From positions 1 to 20,670 of the forward strand of contig NW_021823901.1 of the NCBI RefSeq assembly GCF_006345805.1: a stretch of 20,670 nucleotides of DNA. Direction: 5' to 3'. This document shows positions 9,922 through 18,202 of the stretch, piece by piece (within the stretch, counting starts at the first letter, position 1; every line of letters begins with the position of its first letter). Both the position numbers and the translations under genes were made by a program. This DNA comes from Octopus sinensis. Its lineage: Eukaryota. Below the pieces are notes generated by a model that had not been told where the DNA came from, searched no databases, and worked only from the letters and a program-made list of their open reading frames with translations.

Positions 9922-10418
9922 ATATATATATATATATTGTTATATTTCGGAATGGTCATTTTGCCAGTTTAGCCAATAAAAACACACGCACTATATTTTT
10001 GGTGTTATTTTGCTTCAGTGTTATTTATTTTTTACATTAATCTTAATCTTATTTCGGCCAGAGTCCTTTCGTCACACTCCTGTGACCGCATCAGTGGTCC
10101 TTTGTTTACTTCTTTCTTATTTGTATCTCTCCTTACTAACCGTCAGCCATTTTGTATTTCTATTGTATGTCTTCATTTGCGCATGCTTATATCTCTATGT
10201 GCGTCTATGTTTATTTAGTGTGTGTATGTGGGGGGATGCCTGTAATATTTGTATCTTCTGTTTATATATGTTCATGTAATTTGTATTTTGTTTTTGTTGT
10301 TTTTGTTTATTCTTATTTTGTTCATATATATATATATATATATGTGTGTGTATATATATATATATGTATATATATAGTATATATATATATATACATATAT
10401 ACATATACATACATATAT

Positions 10419-10591
10419 AAACAAAATTCAATAAGCTATTAAAACACCACTTGCTATATAGAGATCCATGGCTCTAAAACCACAAATTACTCACAATTAA
10501 ATACACACAGCGAAAGCAATAAACATAGAAATAGGCTTACCTTGTATTAACTACACAAGTAAGGAAGGTGTATATATACCGCAATCAATTG
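10419..10591 (+). repeat. Diverged direct repeat, copy 1 (partner 12649-12823)
   Basis: Shared blocks AAACAAAATTCAA, CCACTTGCTATA, TCTAAAACCA, AATTACTCAC, ATAGGCTTACCTTGTAT, GTAAGGAA, TCAATTG. Confidence 0.85.
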
Positions 10592-10780
10592 GTTTCGCCA
10601 TCTGTATGATAAGCGATACTTAGCCTCGTCAGGCAGACTTAACGCGACAACAGCTATTTCTGAAATATTTATCACGTTACACCGCTGGCGTTCTGAAAAG
10701 TGAATGCCCCCGCGACATTCAAAACGAACAAATTGTGAGCCTGTATAATTTTAGATTACACTGGAATCATCACATTATTA

Positions 10781-11802
10781 TTGGTGAACCGTTTGAAAGG
10801 GCTAAAGTCAGACACTTTCCTCTTTGGTCAAGGCCTCATCAACATTTTCAAGTTTCACTTGAAAAGGAAGATGAGGTTAGCCACGAGAGCCACTGCCTGG
10901 TACTGTATCACGGTATTTTGTTGTTATGATTATTATTATTGTTATTATAAGGAGGGCGAGGCCGTTTTCTTGTGCCTAGTGGCTGTGGCGAAAGAGGTTT
11001 TATGGTGGACCCGTTTGAAAGGGCTAAAGTCAGACACTTTCCTCTTTGGTCAAGGCCCCATCAACTTTTTCGAGTTTCACTTGAAAAGGAAGATGAGGTT
11101 AGCCACGATAGCCACTGCCTGGTACTGTATCACGGTATTTTGTTATTATTATTATTATTATAAGGAGGGCGAGGCCGTTTTCTTGTGCCTAGTGGCTGTG
11201 GCGAAAGAGGTTTTATGGTGGACCCGTTTGAAAGGGCTAAAGTCAGACACTTTCCTCTTTGGTCAAGGCCCCATCAACTTTTTCGAGTTTCACTTGAAAA
11301 GGAAGATGAGGTTAGCCACGAGAGCCACTGCCTGGTACTGTATCACGGTATTTTGTTGTTATGATTATTATTATTGTTATTATAAGGAGGGCGAGGCCGT
11401 TTTCTTGTGCCTAGGCTGTGGCGTGGCGAAAGAGGTTTTATAGTGGACCCGTTTGAAAGGGCTAAAGTCAGACACTTTCCTCTTTGGTCAAGGCCTCATC
11501 AACTTTTTCAAGTTTCACTTGAAAAGGAAGATGAGGTTAGCCACGAGAGCCACTGCCTGGTACTGTATCACAGTATTTTGTTGTTATTATTATTATTAAT
11601 ATTATAAGGAGGGCGAGGCCGTTTTCTTGTGCCTAGTGGCTGTGGCGAAAGAGGTTTTATGGTGGACCCGTTTGAAAGGGCTAAAGTCAGACACTTTCCT
11701 CTTTGGTCAAGGCCTCATCAACTTTTTCAAGTCTCACTTGAAAAGGAAGATGTGGTTAGCCACGAGAGCCACTGCCTGGTACTGTATCACGGTATTTTGT
11801 TG

Positions 11803-11833
<31 letters not shown>

Positions 11834-12027
11834 AAGGAGGGTGAGGACGTTTTCTTGTGCCTAGTGGCTGTGGCGAAAGAGGTTTTATGGTGGACCCGTT
11901 TGAAAGGGCTAAAGTCAGACACTTTCCTCTTTGGTCAAGGCCTCATCAACTTTTTCAAGTCTCACTTGAAAAGGAAGATGTGGTTAGCCACGAGAGCCAC
12001 TGCCTGGTACTGTATCACGGTATTTTG

Positions 12028-12068
<41 letters not shown>

Positions 12069-12219
12069 AGGAGGGTGAGGACGTTTTCTTGTGCCTAGTG
12101 GCTGTGGCGAAAGAGGTTTTATGGTGGACCCGTTTGAAAGGGCTAAAGTCAGACACTTTCCTCTTTGGTCAAGGCCCCATCAACTTTTTCAAGTTTCACT
12201 TGAAAAGGAAGATGAGGTT
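10781..12219 (+). repeat. Tandem array of ~6.5 chimeric units (213-234 bp): LINE ORF2 piece + end of another repeat + variable (TTA)n
   Basis: Anchor ATGGTGGACCCG or its variant at ~10781, 11002, 11215, 11440, 11659, 11887 and 12121. Confidence 0.97.
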
Positions 12220-12593
12220 AGAGAGGAGAGTGCTGTCCGATAGCAAGTTTTATGAAAGGTGGGTGAATTGTGCGAGAATGGCCAGTATAAATGATCCAAT
12301 TCTCAGGTTTCGCCTGTGATTGAAAAAGGCTTTATAAAAGGAGAAAGGGGCTCTCTACCCCCCTTTTGACTAGGCTCCCGTTGGCTTTTATGGGTTTTTT
12401 TTCCACCAGGAACCTTTCGAAGCGCCTCCCCCTATTGGGAGTTTTTCATTGTTATAATCTTTTGTTGTTAAACAGTTTTTACTCGGATTTTTTCAAAAAC
12501 GGACAAAACCCTTTGTAACCTTTCGTCCTGTTTTGTCCCTTTATGTTTACTAATCATGTGTGTCAGCCCTTGTGGCCAATAAAAAGAATTAAA
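12068..12593 (+). mobile_element. 3' end of a Tx1/L1-clade LINE: ORF2 C-terminus (stop 12317-12319), 3' UTR, AATAAA and A-rich end abutting (TAT)n
   Basis: Peptide FLCLVAVAKEVLWWTR...LKRKMRLERRVLSDSKFYERW fits the AK..(I/L)W..R / E / F...W pattern I recall for Tx1-type ORF2 C-termini. Confidence 0.72.
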
Positions 12594-12648
12594 TATTATT
12601 ATTATTAATGAAGGGCCTGGCAAAGTTACACTGTTATAGGTAAAATAC

Positions 12649-12823
12649 AAACAAAATTCAAATGGTTATTAAAATGCCACTTGCTATAAACAGACTTATT
12701 GATCTAAAACCATCAATTACTCACTATTAAAATAAATATGGCGGAAGTCAGAAACATAAAAGACATAGGCTTACCTTGTATAAAATACACAGGTAAGGAA
12801 TGCGTATATTCCGAGATCAATTG
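12649..12823 (+). repeat. Diverged direct repeat, copy 2 (partner 10419-10591)
   Basis: Colinear with copy 1 across ~175 bp. Confidence 0.85.
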
Positions 12824-12858
12824 AATTTGTTTATATAAAGGTGCAAACTTGCTAACCA

Positions 12859-12895
<37 letters not shown>

Positions 12896-13692
12896 GAGTT
12901 AGAGAGCAGTGCATGCCATCAAAGAGACACAGGGGTAAATTATACAAAGCCCAATATACCCATCATGACTACCTGTCCGATAAGTGTACACTAGACACAT
13001 GCATCACAACCATATGTGCACGACATGGTGATCTCGTATTAAGATAAACAGCACATGACCTTGCAGGTGGGGCCCAGTTAGAATTTTCTTCTGGTCAAGT
13101 AACCCATCCCACTCAAAAGGTCCCTGAATAAAGATTAAGATTGTTGAACGAAACAACCATGTTTCCAGAGGTGAATTATTCAAACCCCAAAGAACCGCTT
13201 TCAACACATGGCTATGATGCTCCCCCACTACTTCTGCTCGCGATCAGAGATGAACATATCGTCAGCCACTAAGGGACACGCTCAACTGGTTAAGGTCAAA
13301 CAACTGACAAGCAAATCTATGGTATTGAGCAGAATATTTGCTGTAGCCCATCTTTTATACCTATTTCTTTACTACCCACAAGGGGCTTTACTACACAGAA
13401 TGGACAAACAAGGACAGACAAACGGATTAAGTCAATTACATCGACCCCAGTGCGTAACTGGTACTTAATTTATCGACCCCGAAAGGATGAAAGGCAAAGT
13501 CGACCTCGGCGGAATTTGAACTGAGGATGTAACGGCAGACGAAATACCCGTAAGCATTTCGCCCGGTGCGTTAACATTTCTGCCAGCTCACCGCCATCTT
13601 TTATACCAAGACAAAACAATGTACGTAATAACACTTCTAATCAGTTAAGATCAGAAGCCATGAGAGTCACTGCCTTGTACTGCATCAGGGCA
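12896..13692. mobile_element. Unclassified interspersed repeat bounded by (TTA)n on both sides and interrupted by SINE B
   Basis: (TTA)n at 12861-12895 and from ~13694; the sequence resumes across the SINE TSD; its end (13658-13695) recurs in every array unit. Repeat status is partly from recall. Confidence 0.6.
13362..13593 (-). mobile_element. SINE B, full length, with 14-bp TSD
   Basis: TSD CCATCTTTTATACC at 13348-13361 and 13594-13607; tRNA-like head GGCGGTGAGCTGGCAG..GTTCAAATTCC. Confidence 0.95.
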
Positions 13693-13795
13693 TTTATTAT
13701 TATTATTATTATTATTATTATCTTACTATTATTATTATTATTATTATTAATGTTGGTAATGATACTTATTTAACTGTATACACACACACACGCAC

Positions 13796-14212: not shown

Positions 14213-14241
14213 ATTAAAAGTGTCTATTTACTTCCTGCATG

Positions 14242-14286
<45 letters not shown>

Positions 14287-14316
14287 GCATGCAGGAAGTA
14301 AATAGACACTTTTAAT
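14213..14316. repeat. 104-bp palindrome: 33-bp unique arms (1 mismatch) around (TA)19
   Basis: Left arm ATTAAAAGTGTCTATTTACTTCCTGCATGTCTG (14213-14245); right arm 14284-14316 is its reverse complement except at one base. Confidence 0.97.
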
Positions 14317-14317
14317 T

Positions 14318-14753
14318 TTAAAAAAAGGCGCGTTTTCATTCCGTTTATAAAGAGAATCACAGATGGAAATGCGATCCAAAAGTTTCTTCTCACTCAACCC
14401 ATGTGGTACCCAAACATCGTAGCGATTTGCGTACCCAAGCTTTACCAGGTGCTCATGAACGACGGATTTTGATAGGTTGAGGCTTTCTGACAATTCTCGG
14501 GTTGTGCAATGTGGGTTATTCTCAATTAATGACTTGGTCATCATCTGTAGTGTATAGTCTGTCTGATTGCTCTTTATCAATAAGGCTACAATCTCCAGCT
14601 CGGAACCTTGCGAACCACTTCTGTACAGTTCTTTCGGATTAAGAAACATCACCGTAAACTGCTCATATTTTCTTGGTTGCTTGTGAGGCATTTTTTCCTT
14701 TTACGGAAAAAGAAAAGCATCAAGTGCCGAAAATGAACTTTCTTATCTTCCAT
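14318..14753 (-). pseudogene. Mariner transposase pseudogene fragment (HTH region to WVPH motif), truncated before the DD34D domain
   Basis: MEDKKVHFRHLMLFFFRK / SERTVQKWFARFRAGD / LIENNPHCTTRELSESLNLSKSVVHEHLVKLGYANRYDVWVPHGLSEKKLLDRISICDSL, spread over frameshifts and stops. Confidence 0.93.
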
Positions 14754-15949: not shown

Positions 15950-16143
15950 CATTATACATCATCAACATCATTATCATCACAATCATCGTCCCCTCTCCCC
16001 CACTTCATCATCATCGTCATCGTCATCATCATTACCATCATCATCATCATCACCAACACCACCAGTATCCTCCTCCTCCTCATCATCGTCGTAATTATCA
16101 GCCAAAATTATCAACCACCACTACTTTCACGATCACCACCACC

Positions 16144-16177
<34 letters not shown>

Positions 16178-16583
16178 CAACCATTATCATCATCACCATC
16201 ACCACCTCCACCACCTCCACCACCACCAACGCCACCATCATCATCATCATCGTCATCCTCCTCTTCCTCCTTATCATCATCCTCTTCCTCCTTATCATCA
16301 TCCTCTTCATCATTGTCATCCTCCCCTCCTCATCCTTATTATCATTATCATCATCATCATCATCATCATCATCGTCATCCTCCTCCTCCTCATCATCATC
16401 ATCATTGTCATCCTCCTCATCATCACAACCATTATCATCACCACCACCACCACTACCACCACCAACGCCACCATCATCCTTACCATCATCATCATCATCG
16501 TCATCCTCCTCCTCCTCCTCCTCCCCATCCTTATCCCCATCATCATCATCATCATCATCATCACCATCATCATCACCATCATC

Positions 16584-16615
<32 letters not shown>

Positions 16616-16799
16616 AATCATCATCATCATCATTCTCATCGCCACCACCATCATCATCATCATCATCAGCATCATCATCATATCATCACACCATCATCAT
16701 CATCATCGTCTCATAATCATCATATCATCATCATCATCATCATCATCACCATCATCATATCATCATCATCCAACCCATCATCATCATCCTAATCATCAT

Positions 16800-16831
<32 letters not shown>

Positions 16832-16850
16832 CGTCATCCCTATTACTCAT
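15950..16850. repeat. ~900-bp compound (CAT)/(CAC)/(CCT) microsatellite
   Basis: Directly visible; accounts for ORFs 15940..16617, 16098..16319, 16313..16792 and 16316..16681. Confidence 0.97.
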
Positions 16851-17954: not shown

Positions 17955-18015
<61 letters not shown>

Positions 18016-18020
<5 letters not shown>

Positions 18021-18202
18021 CTTTACTACCCCAAAGGGGCTAAACACAGAGGGGACAAACAAGGACAGACAAACCAGTACGCAACTGGTTCTTAATTTAT
18101 CGACCCCGAAAGCATGAGAGGCAAAGTCGACCTCGACGGAATTTGAACTCAGAACGTAACGGCAGACGCATTTCGCCCGGCGTGCTAACGATTCTGCCAG
18201 CT
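18016..18202 (-). mobile_element. SINE B with internal deletions
   Basis: Colinear with 13362-13593. Confidence 0.9.

What the first reader, a model, noticed from the sequence alone, without database searches (positions are those of the whole stretch)
10781..12319. Chimeric LINE/repeat/(TTA)n tandem array that keeps one reading frame for 513 codons and would encode a poly-Tyr repeat protein
Seen: each unit joins ~150 bp of LINE ORF2 C-terminus (AAGGAGGG...GAGGTTAG), 38 bp matching the end of the unrelated repeat at 13658-13695 (32/38 identical, joined at a shared AG), and a (TTA)n of variable length. The last unit runs straight into the intact LINE 3' end. All periods (213, 225, 219, 228, 234) are multiples of 3. 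The frame of 10781 reaches the LINE stop at 12319 with only two point stops (TAG 11441-11443, TAA 11597-11599). A -2/+5 indel pair near 11413-11427 also restores frame. Repeat peptide: KEGEAVFLCLVAVAKEVLWWTRLKGLKSDTFLFGQG.INFF.FHLKRKM.LATRATAWYCITVFCC(Y)n. Inference: a LINE 5' junction was amplified into a new minisatellite, possibly a proto-gene. Caveat: frame retention is partly expected from a triplet microsatellite plus a 1-in-3 chance for core length.
Basis: partly seen in the sequence, partly recalled or inferred. Interest (0 to 1): 0.8.

Follow-up and report, generated by a model that had tools for sequence, protein, structure and literature searches.

The report
Retrotransposon-derived minisatellite, not a gene
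A short tandem array was built from the tail end of a jumping gene (an L1-type LINE) fused to the tail of a second repeat; its long open reading frame looks like an inherited by-product, so this is an ordinary way for junk DNA to make a minisatellite and shows no sign of being a new gene.

Summary
Window 10782-12221 is a 6.4-copy tandem array with a period of 213-234 bp. Each unit has three parts: 154 bp from the C-terminal coding region of an L1-superfamily LINE ORF2, a 40-bp segment (T38) that matches the 3' terminus of a second (TTA)n-tailed repeat (X, 12896-13695), and a (TTA)n tract. Only the last unit continues into the true ORF2 end (stop 12317-12319), the 3' UTR and the LINE's own (ATT)n tail.

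The proto-gene reading is not supported. T38 and (TTA)n have no stop codon in any forward frame, so keeping the frame only needs a unit length divisible by three, a chance of about 1 in 3. All length variation lies in the trinucleotide tract. The units differ by 10 point substitutions, 8 non-synonymous (one nonsense) and 2 synonymous, which is the neutral expectation. The frame carries two stops. No database protein contains the chimeric peptide.

Most likely origin: a 5'-truncated chimeric retrocopy (LINE fragment + T38 + tail, formed by template switching) and a 5'-truncated LINE copy landed at one (TTA)n tract. Unequal exchange between their shared LINE segment then built the array. This matches the known double-insertion route to TE-derived tandem repeats. 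I could not test whether the junction is unique, because no host genome was searchable.

The parts
10773..10781 (+). (ATT)3 at the left edge of the array. Probably a remnant of the (TTA)n/(ATT)n target tract, or microhomology at a 5' junction.
   Evidence: Sequence. LINE homology starts at about 10781-10787.
10782..10948 (+). Unit u0, 5'-truncated. It holds LINE ORF2 fragment positions ~55-154 (to GGTTAG 10875-10880), T38 (10881-10920) and a 28-nt interrupted (TTA)n tail.
   Evidence: Its tail is identical to that of u2.
10949..11161 (+). Unit u1 (213 bp): 154-bp LINE ORF2 fragment, 40-bp T38, 19-nt (TTA)n.
11162..11383 (+). Unit u2 (222 bp).
11384..11605 (+). Unit u3 (222 bp). It carries the -2/+5 indel pair, the TGG>TAG stop (11441-11443) and, in its tail, TAA (11597-11599).
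11606..11833 (+). Unit u4 (228 bp). It shares the variants C128/T148 with u5.
11834..12067 (+). Unit u5 (234 bp). It shares T9/A14 with u6 and C128/T148 with u4, and has the longest, purest (TTA)n tail.
12068..12319 (+). Terminal copy u6, the genuine last 83 codons plus stop of an L1-superfamily LINE ORF2. It is 5'-truncated at AAGGAGGG and is the parent of the 154-bp core.
   Evidence: 75% identical, ungapped, to residues 1029-1111 of the 1111-aa ORF2 P0155, ending at the same stop. See also P0001 and P0003.
12320..12609 (+). LINE 3' UTR with AATAAA (12578-12583) and the element's own (ATT)4AAT tail (12595-12609).
   Evidence: Two conserved 3'-UTR blocks and the terminus align to L019, which ends in AATAAA...(ATT)22+.
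12861..12895 (+). (TTA)12 tract immediately 5' of element X.
12896..13749 (+). Element X, a non-coding (TTA)n-tailed repeat: body 12896-13361 plus 13608-13695, tail 13696-13749. Its last 40 bp (13656-13695) are the relative of T38. It carries a nested SINE (13362-13607) with the 14-bp duplication CCATCTTTTATACC.

Best explanation
This is a neutrally evolving minisatellite derived from transposable elements, and its long reading frame is an inherited by-product.

Shown by the data:
- The 154-bp core is the ORF2 C-terminal coding region of an L1-superfamily LINE (APE + RT + CCHC zinc knuckle) whose natural 3' tail is a (TTA)n/(ATT)n microsatellite.
- The 40-bp T38 is the 3' terminus of a different (TTA)n-tailed, non-coding repeat, X.
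- Only the last copy is continuous with the LINE's true 3' end.
- Variants are shared between neighbouring units in shifted register.

Inferred origin:
1. A chimeric retrocopy formed when the reverse transcriptase copied the tail and last 38-40 nt of an X-type RNA. It then switched at an AG microhomology onto LINE RNA (or the neighbouring LINE DNA) and stopped about 100 nt further on. The product was core(55-154)-T38-(TTA)n.
2. A 5'-truncated LINE copy starting at AAGGAGGG lies directly against the same (TTA)n tract. The order of the two insertions is unknown.
3. The two insertions share about 100 bp of LINE sequence, 222 bp apart. Out-of-register (unequal) exchange between these segments creates full internal units, core(0-154)-T38-(TTA)n. 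Repeats of this, plus conversion and microsatellite slippage, built 6.4 copies.

This single scheme explains the truncated first unit, the identical AAGGAGGG start of every internal unit, and the last unit running into the LINE 3' end. The frame stays open because the core is read in its ancestral ORF2 frame, T38 and (TTA)n contain no forward stops, and the founding unit length happened to be a multiple of three.
For: Array and junctions.

LINE identity:
- P0002 and P0001 hits.
- 75% ungapped identity to the last 83 aa of P0155, which carries Exo_endo_phos + RVT_1 + zf-RVT.
- Distant relatives P0144, P0094 and P0086 carry the same domains.
- The best solved relatives are human L1 ORF2p, E 1e-50.

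Tail and T38:
- The family's tail is (ATT)n: L019 ends AATAAA...(ATT)22+, and window 12578-12609 ends the same way.
- T38 matches the X terminus and is absent from the LINE relatives.

In-situ exchange:
- u5 and u6 share T9/A14, while u4 and u5 share C128/T148. The block [core 3' part-T38-tail-core 5' part] is therefore duplicated and includes the LINE-linked terminal copy.
- u0 and u2 share an identical interrupted 28-nt tail but differ at 3 core sites, a mosaic pattern.

Neutrality:
- 10 substitution events, 2 synonymous and 8 non-synonymous (1 nonsense), against an expected synonymous fraction of 0.22-0.28. Codon positions are 3/5/2.
- Two in-frame stops.
- All length differences lie in the trinucleotide tract, apart from one net +3 indel.
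- T38 and (TTA)n are stop-free in all forward frames.

Precedent:
- Double insertion followed by unequal exchange. Tail-to-internal junctions and distinct 5' truncations are its signature for non-LTR elements (PMC5932611).
- Template-switch chimeras (PMC2104539, PMC4476161).
Against: - The origin steps are inferred from one locus. No host genome could be searched, so I cannot show that the GGTTAG|CCACGAG junction is unique to this locus.
- Pattern scans of metagenome, viral and prokaryote collections gave only chance hits. These collections are not expected to hold the host genome.
- The left boundary (a mid-unit start next to (ATT)3) is equally what a 5'-truncated retrocopy of an already-arrayed element would show.
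- The AG microhomology is only 2 nt.
- Target-site duplications cannot be defined inside a microsatellite.
- The neutrality test rests on only 10 substitutions.
Confidence: 0.6

Rival explanations
1. The array was not built here. A non-autonomous LINE derivative already carried the internal tandem array in place of part of ORF2, and window 10782-12609 is one 5'-truncated retrocopy of it, inserted into a short (ATT)n tract.
For: The array starts in mid-unit directly after (ATT)3 and ends with the LINE's own (ATT)n tail. This is how a 5'-truncated insertion of this family into its preferred microsatellite would look.
Against: None of 152 ORF2 C-terminal relatives, nor the two word-index hits, carries T38 or poly-Tyr sequence, although these come from other taxa. 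Shifted-register variant sharing shows that exchange took place among the units, though that could have happened in a master copy.
Confidence: 0.15
2. The ~200-bp chimera (LINE fragment + T38 + (TTA)n) is a discrete SINE-like mobile element. The array arose either by repeated retrotransposition into its own (TTA)n tail, or by the reverse transcriptase jumping end-to-end between several such RNAs in one insertion event.
For: Every unit ends in a retroelement-type tail. Three or four (TTA)n-tailed elements lie head-to-tail in 3.3 kb, which suggests (TTA)n targeting. Microsatellite-targeting LINEs are known: Kibi and Koshi in the Tx1 group (PMC4494074).
Against: The last unit is continuous with the LINE 3' end and starts at exactly the same base as the others. 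That needs a coincidence unless the element was born at this locus. Adjacent units share derived variants in shifted register, which serial independent insertions do not predict. No internal promoter or tRNA-like head was found (Rfam: nothing).
Confidence: 0.1
3. A 38-40-bp 5'-truncated X-type insertion landed inside a LINE copy at GGTTAG|AGAGG with an unusually long (~154 bp) target-site duplication. This gave two cores flanking T38-(TTA)n, which then expanded.
For: It yields the core-T38-tail-core-LINE 3' arrangement in one event (structure).
Against: It needs a very long duplication. It also needs a separate deletion to explain the truncated first unit and the lack of any LINE sequence upstream.
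Confidence: 0.05
4. The array is, or is becoming, a protein-coding gene for a repeat protein with poly-Tyr blocks, with its frame kept by selection.
For: 513 codons with only two internal stops. A -2/+5 indel pair restores the frame. ATG-initiated stretches of 190 and 189 codons exist.
Against: - The prior for frame retention is about 1/3.
- The substitution pattern is neutral.
- The unit with the compensated indel also carries a nonsense codon 20 bp downstream.
- There are no Pfam families above cut-off and no homologous chimeric proteins.
Confidence: 0.03
5. The array, or its copy number, is an assembly artefact.
For: Tandem repeats with microsatellite spacers are prone to mis-assembly. This cannot be checked here.
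Against: Units carry unit-specific substitutions, indels and tail lengths in a coherent mosaic, and the ends join cleanly to unique flanks and to the LINE 3' end.
Confidence: 0.05

Closest known systems
TE tandem dimers and arrays formed by double insertion at one target site, then expanded by unequal exchange (McGurk & Barbash 2018, PMC5932611; classic case: R1 arrays)
   Same: There is a tail-to-internal junction between the 3' tail of one retroelement copy and the 5'-truncated start of the next. The two founders have distinct 5' truncations. The target-like sequence, (TTA)n, sits in the junction. Later expansion and mixing of variants occurred by out-of-register exchange.
   Different: The two founders are not the same element. 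One is a chimera that carries a foreign 3' terminus (T38), so only about 100 bp of shared LINE sequence drives the exchange. The array is small (6.4 units), and there are no population data.
Template-switch chimeric retrocopies made by LINE reverse transcriptases (U6/L1 chimeras; MGL/WEIRD chimeras in Magnaporthe; PMC4476161, PMC2104539)
   Same: Two unrelated transcripts are fused head-to-tail in the same orientation. The 3' part carries the retroelement tail, and there is a short microhomology (AG) at the fusion point.
   Different: Here the 5' part is the LINE's own coding region and the 3' part is only about 40 nt of a non-coding repeat. The tail is a (TTA)n microsatellite rather than poly(A). 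Flanking duplications cannot be read. The chimera has been amplified in tandem.
L1-superfamily LINEs, in particular the L1-Tx1 group annotated as recently active in Octopus vulgaris (PMC13282606) and the microsatellite-targeting Tx1 lineages Kibi and Koshi (PMC4494074)
   Same: The closest full-length relative has an ORF1 with a CCHC knuckle and an ORF2 with APE, RT and a C-terminal zf-RVT knuckle. (TTA)n-tailed elements cluster head-to-tail at (TTA)n tracts in the window.
   Different: The window copy holds only the last 83 codons and the 3' UTR. No phylogeny was made, so placement within Tx1 is untested. (TTA)n targeting rests on three or four junctions only.
Dong (R4 clade), the classic (TAA)n-specific LINE
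   Same: Association with (TAA)n/(TTA)n microsatellites.
   Different: R4-clade elements have a restriction-like endonuclease and no APE domain. The relative here has APE and is closest to L1 ORF2p. It works alike at most and is not a member.

Membership tests
L1-superfamily non-LTR retrotransposon (LINE part, 12068-12609) | ORF2 with APE endonuclease, reverse transcriptase and a C-terminal CCHC (zf-RVT) motif | tested here: met
   The window holds only the last 83 codons. These align ungapped at 75% identity to the C-terminus of P0155, which carries Exo_endo_phos + RVT_1 + zf-RVT. More distant relatives (P0144, P0094, P0086) carry the same domains. The best PDB relatives are human L1 ORF2p.
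L1-superfamily non-LTR retrotransposon (LINE part, 12068-12609) | Conserved 3' UTR and family-specific 3' tail | tested here: met
   Two 3'-UTR blocks and the AATAAA-(ATT)n terminus are shared with L019.
L1-Tx1 subgroup | Phylogenetic placement of the RT within the Tx1 lineage | not tested
   No reference Tx1 sequences or tree were made. The only hints are an ORF1 with a CCHC knuckle in L019 and the presence of L1-Tx1 families in Octopus vulgaris.
Microsatellite-targeting LINE (works like Kibi/Koshi/Dong) | Most copies flanked 5' by the same microsatellite that forms the 3' tail | tested here: inconclusive
   The window shows (TTA)n at the 5' side of the LINE copy, of X and of the array, but that is only 3-4 junctions. 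L019 is cut within ORF1, so its 5' junction is unknown.
TE-derived tandem array by double insertion + unequal exchange | Junction between an intact 3' tail and a 5'-truncated element start, with different truncation points in the founders | tested here: met
   (TTA)n|AAGGAGGG occurs in every unit. u0 is truncated at about position 55 and the others at position 0.
TE-derived tandem array by double insertion + unequal exchange | Evidence of out-of-register exchange among units | tested here: met
   Variant sharing is in shifted register (u4/u5 against u5/u6). u0 and u2 share an identical complex tail but have different cores.
TE-derived tandem array by double insertion + unequal exchange | Copy-number polymorphism, or intermediate dimers in other individuals or species | not testable with these tools
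   No host genomes or reads were available.
Template-switch chimeric retrocopy | Two independent parent transcripts fused in the same orientation, with microhomology at the junction | tested here: met
   Both parents are present in the window (LINE 12068-12609; X 12896-13749). They are joined at a shared AG.
Template-switch chimeric retrocopy | Target-site duplications flanking the whole chimera | tested here: inconclusive
   Both flanks are ATT/TTA repeats, which cannot be told apart from the tail.
Protein-coding gene / proto-gene | Uninterrupted ORF | tested here: not met
   Internal stops at 11441-11443 and 11597-11599.
Protein-coding gene / proto-gene | Excess of synonymous over non-synonymous change among copies | tested here: not met
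   2 synonymous to 8 non-synonymous changes, against an expected synonymous fraction of 0.22-0.28. The sample is small.
Protein-coding gene / proto-gene | Transcription and translation | not testable with these tools
   No expression data were available. There are no homologous chimeric proteins in the databases.

The most novel reading that the evidence does not exclude
The ~200-bp chimera (LINE ORF2 fragment head + foreign 3' terminus + (TTA)n) is a live, self-tail-targeting non-autonomous retroelement family. It builds arrays by retrotransposition or RT template jumping. Alternatively, the array is transcribed and translated into a poly-Tyr repeat peptide.
Probability: 0.07. Interest if true: 0.5.

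Novelty: new member of a known kind. Interest (0 to 1): 0.2.

Why it matters
The locus is a clean, small-scale example of how two retroelement insertions at one microsatellite can seed a minisatellite. All the junctions needed to read its history are still visible. It also documents an L1-superfamily LINE lineage whose 3' tail is a (TTA)n microsatellite, and it hints that this lineage and its passengers pile up at (TTA)n tracts.

It does not open a new question. The long ORF is explained by ancestry and arithmetic, so it should not be carried forward as a candidate new gene without expression data.

Tried and rejected
1. External scans
- An exact scan for the junction (GGTTAGCCAYGAKAGYCACTGCC) in metagenome contigs gave 0 hits.
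- Scans for the T38 20-mer gave 10 hits in metagenome contigs, 2 in viral contigs and 4 in prokaryote genome contigs. None has the upstream AGCCAYGAGAG or a downstream (TTA)n, so I read all of them as chance matches. These collections are not expected to hold the host genome, so this says little about uniqueness.

2. Tests on X and the flanks
- X as a diverged 3' end of the same LINE: no significant alignment beyond the first ~14 nt, and no match to L019, L020, L001 or L002.
- The left flank (10592-10780) as an X-like or T38-like element: not significant.

3. Structure, family and literature searches
- A conserved hairpin in T38 or the LINE terminus: folding energies are no better than shuffles.
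- Rfam on the whole window: nothing.
- Pfam on the array ORFs: only sub-threshold chance hits.
- A literature search for the sequence strings: one irrelevant hit.
- A word-index protein search with the last unit found only two LINE fragments and no array-bearing ORFs.

Full report
**1. What is in the sequence**

The window looks like cephalopod (octopus-type) DNA. It is rich in short interspersed repeats and TA/TG microsatellites. That assignment comes from my own recognition of the repeats and was not tested.

TRF finds a tandem array at 10782-12221 with period 222, 6.4 copies, 93% matches and score 2412. The repeat finder gives seven copies with spacings of 222, 213, 225, 219, 228 and 234.

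The unit anchor AAGGAGGG lies at 10949, 11162, 11384, 11606, 11834 and 12068. The junction GGTTAG|CCACGA(G/T)AG occurs six times, while the seventh GGTTAG (12216-12221) continues into AGAGGAGAG.

The frame of 10781 runs 513 codons to TGA 12317-12319, with only TAG 11441-11443 and TAA 11597-11599 inside it. The other five frames carry 13-60 stops.

**2. The three parts of a unit**

*(a) The 154-bp core*
- A word-index protein search with the last unit found two fragments. P0002 has a zf-RVT CCHC motif, and P0001 ends ...FYERWVRVANMACVNGPTLSMRL.
- tblastn and blastn show that every unit matches P0002 residues 81-120. Only the last copy runs on to the end of P0001.
- An exhaustive HMMER search with P0002 found 194 relatives. 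The closest cluster contains P0155, a 1111-aa protein on a 5.2-kb metagenome contig (L019). It carries Exo_endo_phos, RVT_1 and zf-RVT.
- Window 12068-12316 is 75% identical, without gaps, to P0155 residues 1029-1111 and ends at the same stop.
- P0155's best solved relatives are human L1 ORF2p, E 1e-50. L019 also has an upstream ORF with a CCHC knuckle.
- The core is therefore the C-terminal coding region of an L1-superfamily LINE, read in its ancestral frame.

*(b) The LINE tail*
- L019 ends AATAAA...(ATT)22+.
- The window's LINE 3' UTR shares two conserved blocks with L019 and ends AATAAA...(ATT)4AAT at 12578-12609.
- A (TTA)n/(ATT)n microsatellite is therefore the natural tail of this LINE lineage.

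*(c) T38*
A 20-mer from this segment hits 7 times in the window against 0 expected.
- The match is the 3' terminus of element X (12896-13695). X is a non-coding repeat flanked by (TTA)12 on its 5' side and by its own (TTA)n tail.
- X is interrupted by a nested SINE with a 14-bp duplication.
- X and T38 have no counterpart in the LINE relatives.

**3. Is the frame meaningful?**

- T38 has no stop in any of the three forward frames, and neither does (TTA)n.
- The core is 194 bp in every complete unit, or 197 bp in u3 after a net +3 indel. All other length differences lie in the trinucleotide tract.
- The frame is therefore kept whenever the founding unit length is a multiple of three, a prior of about 1/3.
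- The units differ by 10 point-substitution events: 2 synonymous and 8 non-synonymous, including one nonsense. They fall at codon positions 3/5/2. The expected synonymous fraction is 0.22-0.28, and the binomial p is 1.0.
- The unit with the compensating -2/+5 indel pair also has the TGG>TAG stop 20 bp downstream.
- No Pfam family passes its cut-off on the array ORFs.
- None of the 152 LINE relatives, nor any word-index hit, carries a poly-Tyr or T38-encoded peptide.
- I conclude that the reading frame is inherited and incidental. The sample of substitutions is small, and expression could not be tested.

**4. How the array arose**

The alignment of units and the variant table show sharing in shifted register.
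- u5 and u6 share T9/A14 at the 5' end of the core. u4 and u5 share C128/T148 near its 3' end.
- The block [core 3' part-T38-tail-core 5' part] therefore occurs twice, and the duplication includes the terminal copy that is joined to the LINE 3' end.
- u0 and u2 have an identical, interrupted 28-nt tail but differ at three core sites, which is a mosaic pattern.
- The longest and purest (TTA)n tails are in u4 and u5. These are also the units that share derived variants with their neighbours.
- These patterns are what unequal exchange and conversion within the locus produce.

The simplest founder state that explains all boundaries needs two insertions:
- a 5'-truncated chimera, core(55-154)-T38-(TTA)n;
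- a 5'-truncated LINE copy that begins at AAGGAGGG and abuts the same (TTA)n tract.

One out-of-register crossover between the two ~100-bp LINE segments yields an internal unit, core(0-154)-T38-(TTA)n. It leaves the first unit truncated and the last unit joined to the LINE 3' end, which is what is seen.

This is the double-insertion route described for Drosophila TEs. There, tail-to-internal junctions and distinct 5' truncations mark independent non-LTR insertions that later expand by unequal exchange (PMC5932611).

The chimera itself is best explained by template switching of the reverse transcriptase from an X-type RNA, after about 40 nt, onto LINE sequence at an AG microhomology. U6/L1 and fungal chimeras form the same way (PMC4476161, PMC2104539).

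These origin steps are inference from one locus.

**5. Rivals**

- The array may have existed already in a mobile LINE derivative, and this would then be a 5'-truncated retrocopy of it. The mid-unit left boundary next to (ATT)3 fits that equally well.
- The chimera may be a mobile SINE-like family that targets its own tail. Against this, the last unit's continuity with the LINE 3' end and the shifted-register variant sharing are not what that model predicts.
- A long (~154 bp) target duplication around a tiny X-type insertion would need an extra deletion to explain the first unit.
- An assembly artefact is unlikely, given the coherent unit-specific variants, but cannot be excluded here.

The key test is whether the junction is unique in the host genome, and I could not run it. 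Scans of metagenome, viral and prokaryote collections gave nothing or only chance matches.

**6. Comparison with what is known, and verdict**

- LINE part: a member of the L1 superfamily. The domain architecture was tested in relatives and the C-terminus and tail were tested in the window. Placement within L1-Tx1 is untested. L1-Tx1 families are annotated as recently active in Octopus vulgaris (PMC13282606).
- Targeting: the head-to-tail clustering of (TTA)n-tailed elements resembles microsatellite-targeting LINEs such as Kibi and Koshi (PMC4494074). With three or four junctions this remains inconclusive.
- Array: a new example of a known kind, a TE-derived minisatellite seeded by adjacent insertions.
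- Interest is low, at about 0.2. The proto-gene idea should be dropped unless expression data say otherwise.

Noticed in passing
window 12896-12912 versus 12211-12232: The 5' end of element X (GAGTTAGAGAGCAGTGC) resembles the LINE exactly across the chimeric junction point (GAGGTTAGAGAGGAGAGTGC), including a 9-nt exact GTTAGAGAG. My rough estimate for that register is p of about 1e-3, but the comparison is post hoc and the sequence is purine-rich. The local alignment as a whole is not significant (157 of 1000 shuffles). It could be chance or a recurrent switch or truncation point.
   Followed up: partly
window 10415-10591 and 12645-12823: A ~180-bp segment is repeated (78% identity) on both sides of the array + LINE block. 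Each copy lies upstream of a (TTA)n/(ATT)n tract, but the sequences between the repeat and the tract are unrelated. It is either an old local duplication or another dispersed repeat. No other copy is in the window.
   Followed up: partly
window 10773-13749: Three or four (TTA)n-tailed elements lie head-to-tail within about 3 kb: the array + LINE, the 12610-12895 segment ending in (TTA)12, and X with its own tail. This suggests serial insertion into (TTA)n tracts, that is, microsatellite targeting by this LINE lineage.
   Followed up: partly
window 13362-13607; related copies at 3947-4485 and 18010-18202: A SINE is nested in X on the minus strand, with a 14-bp duplication CCATCTTTTATACC (13348-13361 and 13594-13607). 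The same SINE family forms a head-to-tail trimer at 3947-4485 (period 183, 3.0 copies).
   Followed up: partly
window 2100-2399, 5148-5504, 2235-3074: A second SINE family occurs as tandem dimers (periods 161 and 177) and as a 409-nt inverted pair, 92% complementary and 22 nt apart. Tandem and inverted SINE dimers are therefore common in this stretch, in line with frequent double insertion.
   Followed up: no
window 14224-14691 (- strand): A 155-aa ORF with a winged helix-turn-helix (Pfam HTH_24, E 6e-06) and a sub-threshold Transposase-associated domain hit (20.9 bits against a cut-off of 27.7). By eye it looks like the N-terminal DNA-binding part of a mariner-type transposase remnant.
   Followed up: partly
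window 6050-6526: An unrelated 101-bp tandem repeat of 4.7 copies, 92% matches, AT-rich with A/T runs.
   Followed up: no
window 16005-16838, 1-162, 347-561: A very long imperfect (TCA)n tract of about 279 copies gives extreme GC skew. Related (ATC)n and (TGA)n tracts lie at the start of the window in both orientations. They create long spurious ORFs of low-complexity peptides.
   Followed up: no
window ~1647-1675: A short interstitial telomere-like run (GGTTAGGCTTAGGGTTAGGGTTA) directly after a (TG)n tract.
   Followed up: no
L019 (JGI metagenome 3300045642), L020, L001, L002: Contigs labelled as metagenome, or from a fragmented draft assembly, carry near-full-length or partial copies of this animal LINE at 75-82% DNA identity to the window. 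This points to host (probably mollusc or cephalopod) DNA in those data sets.
   Followed up: no
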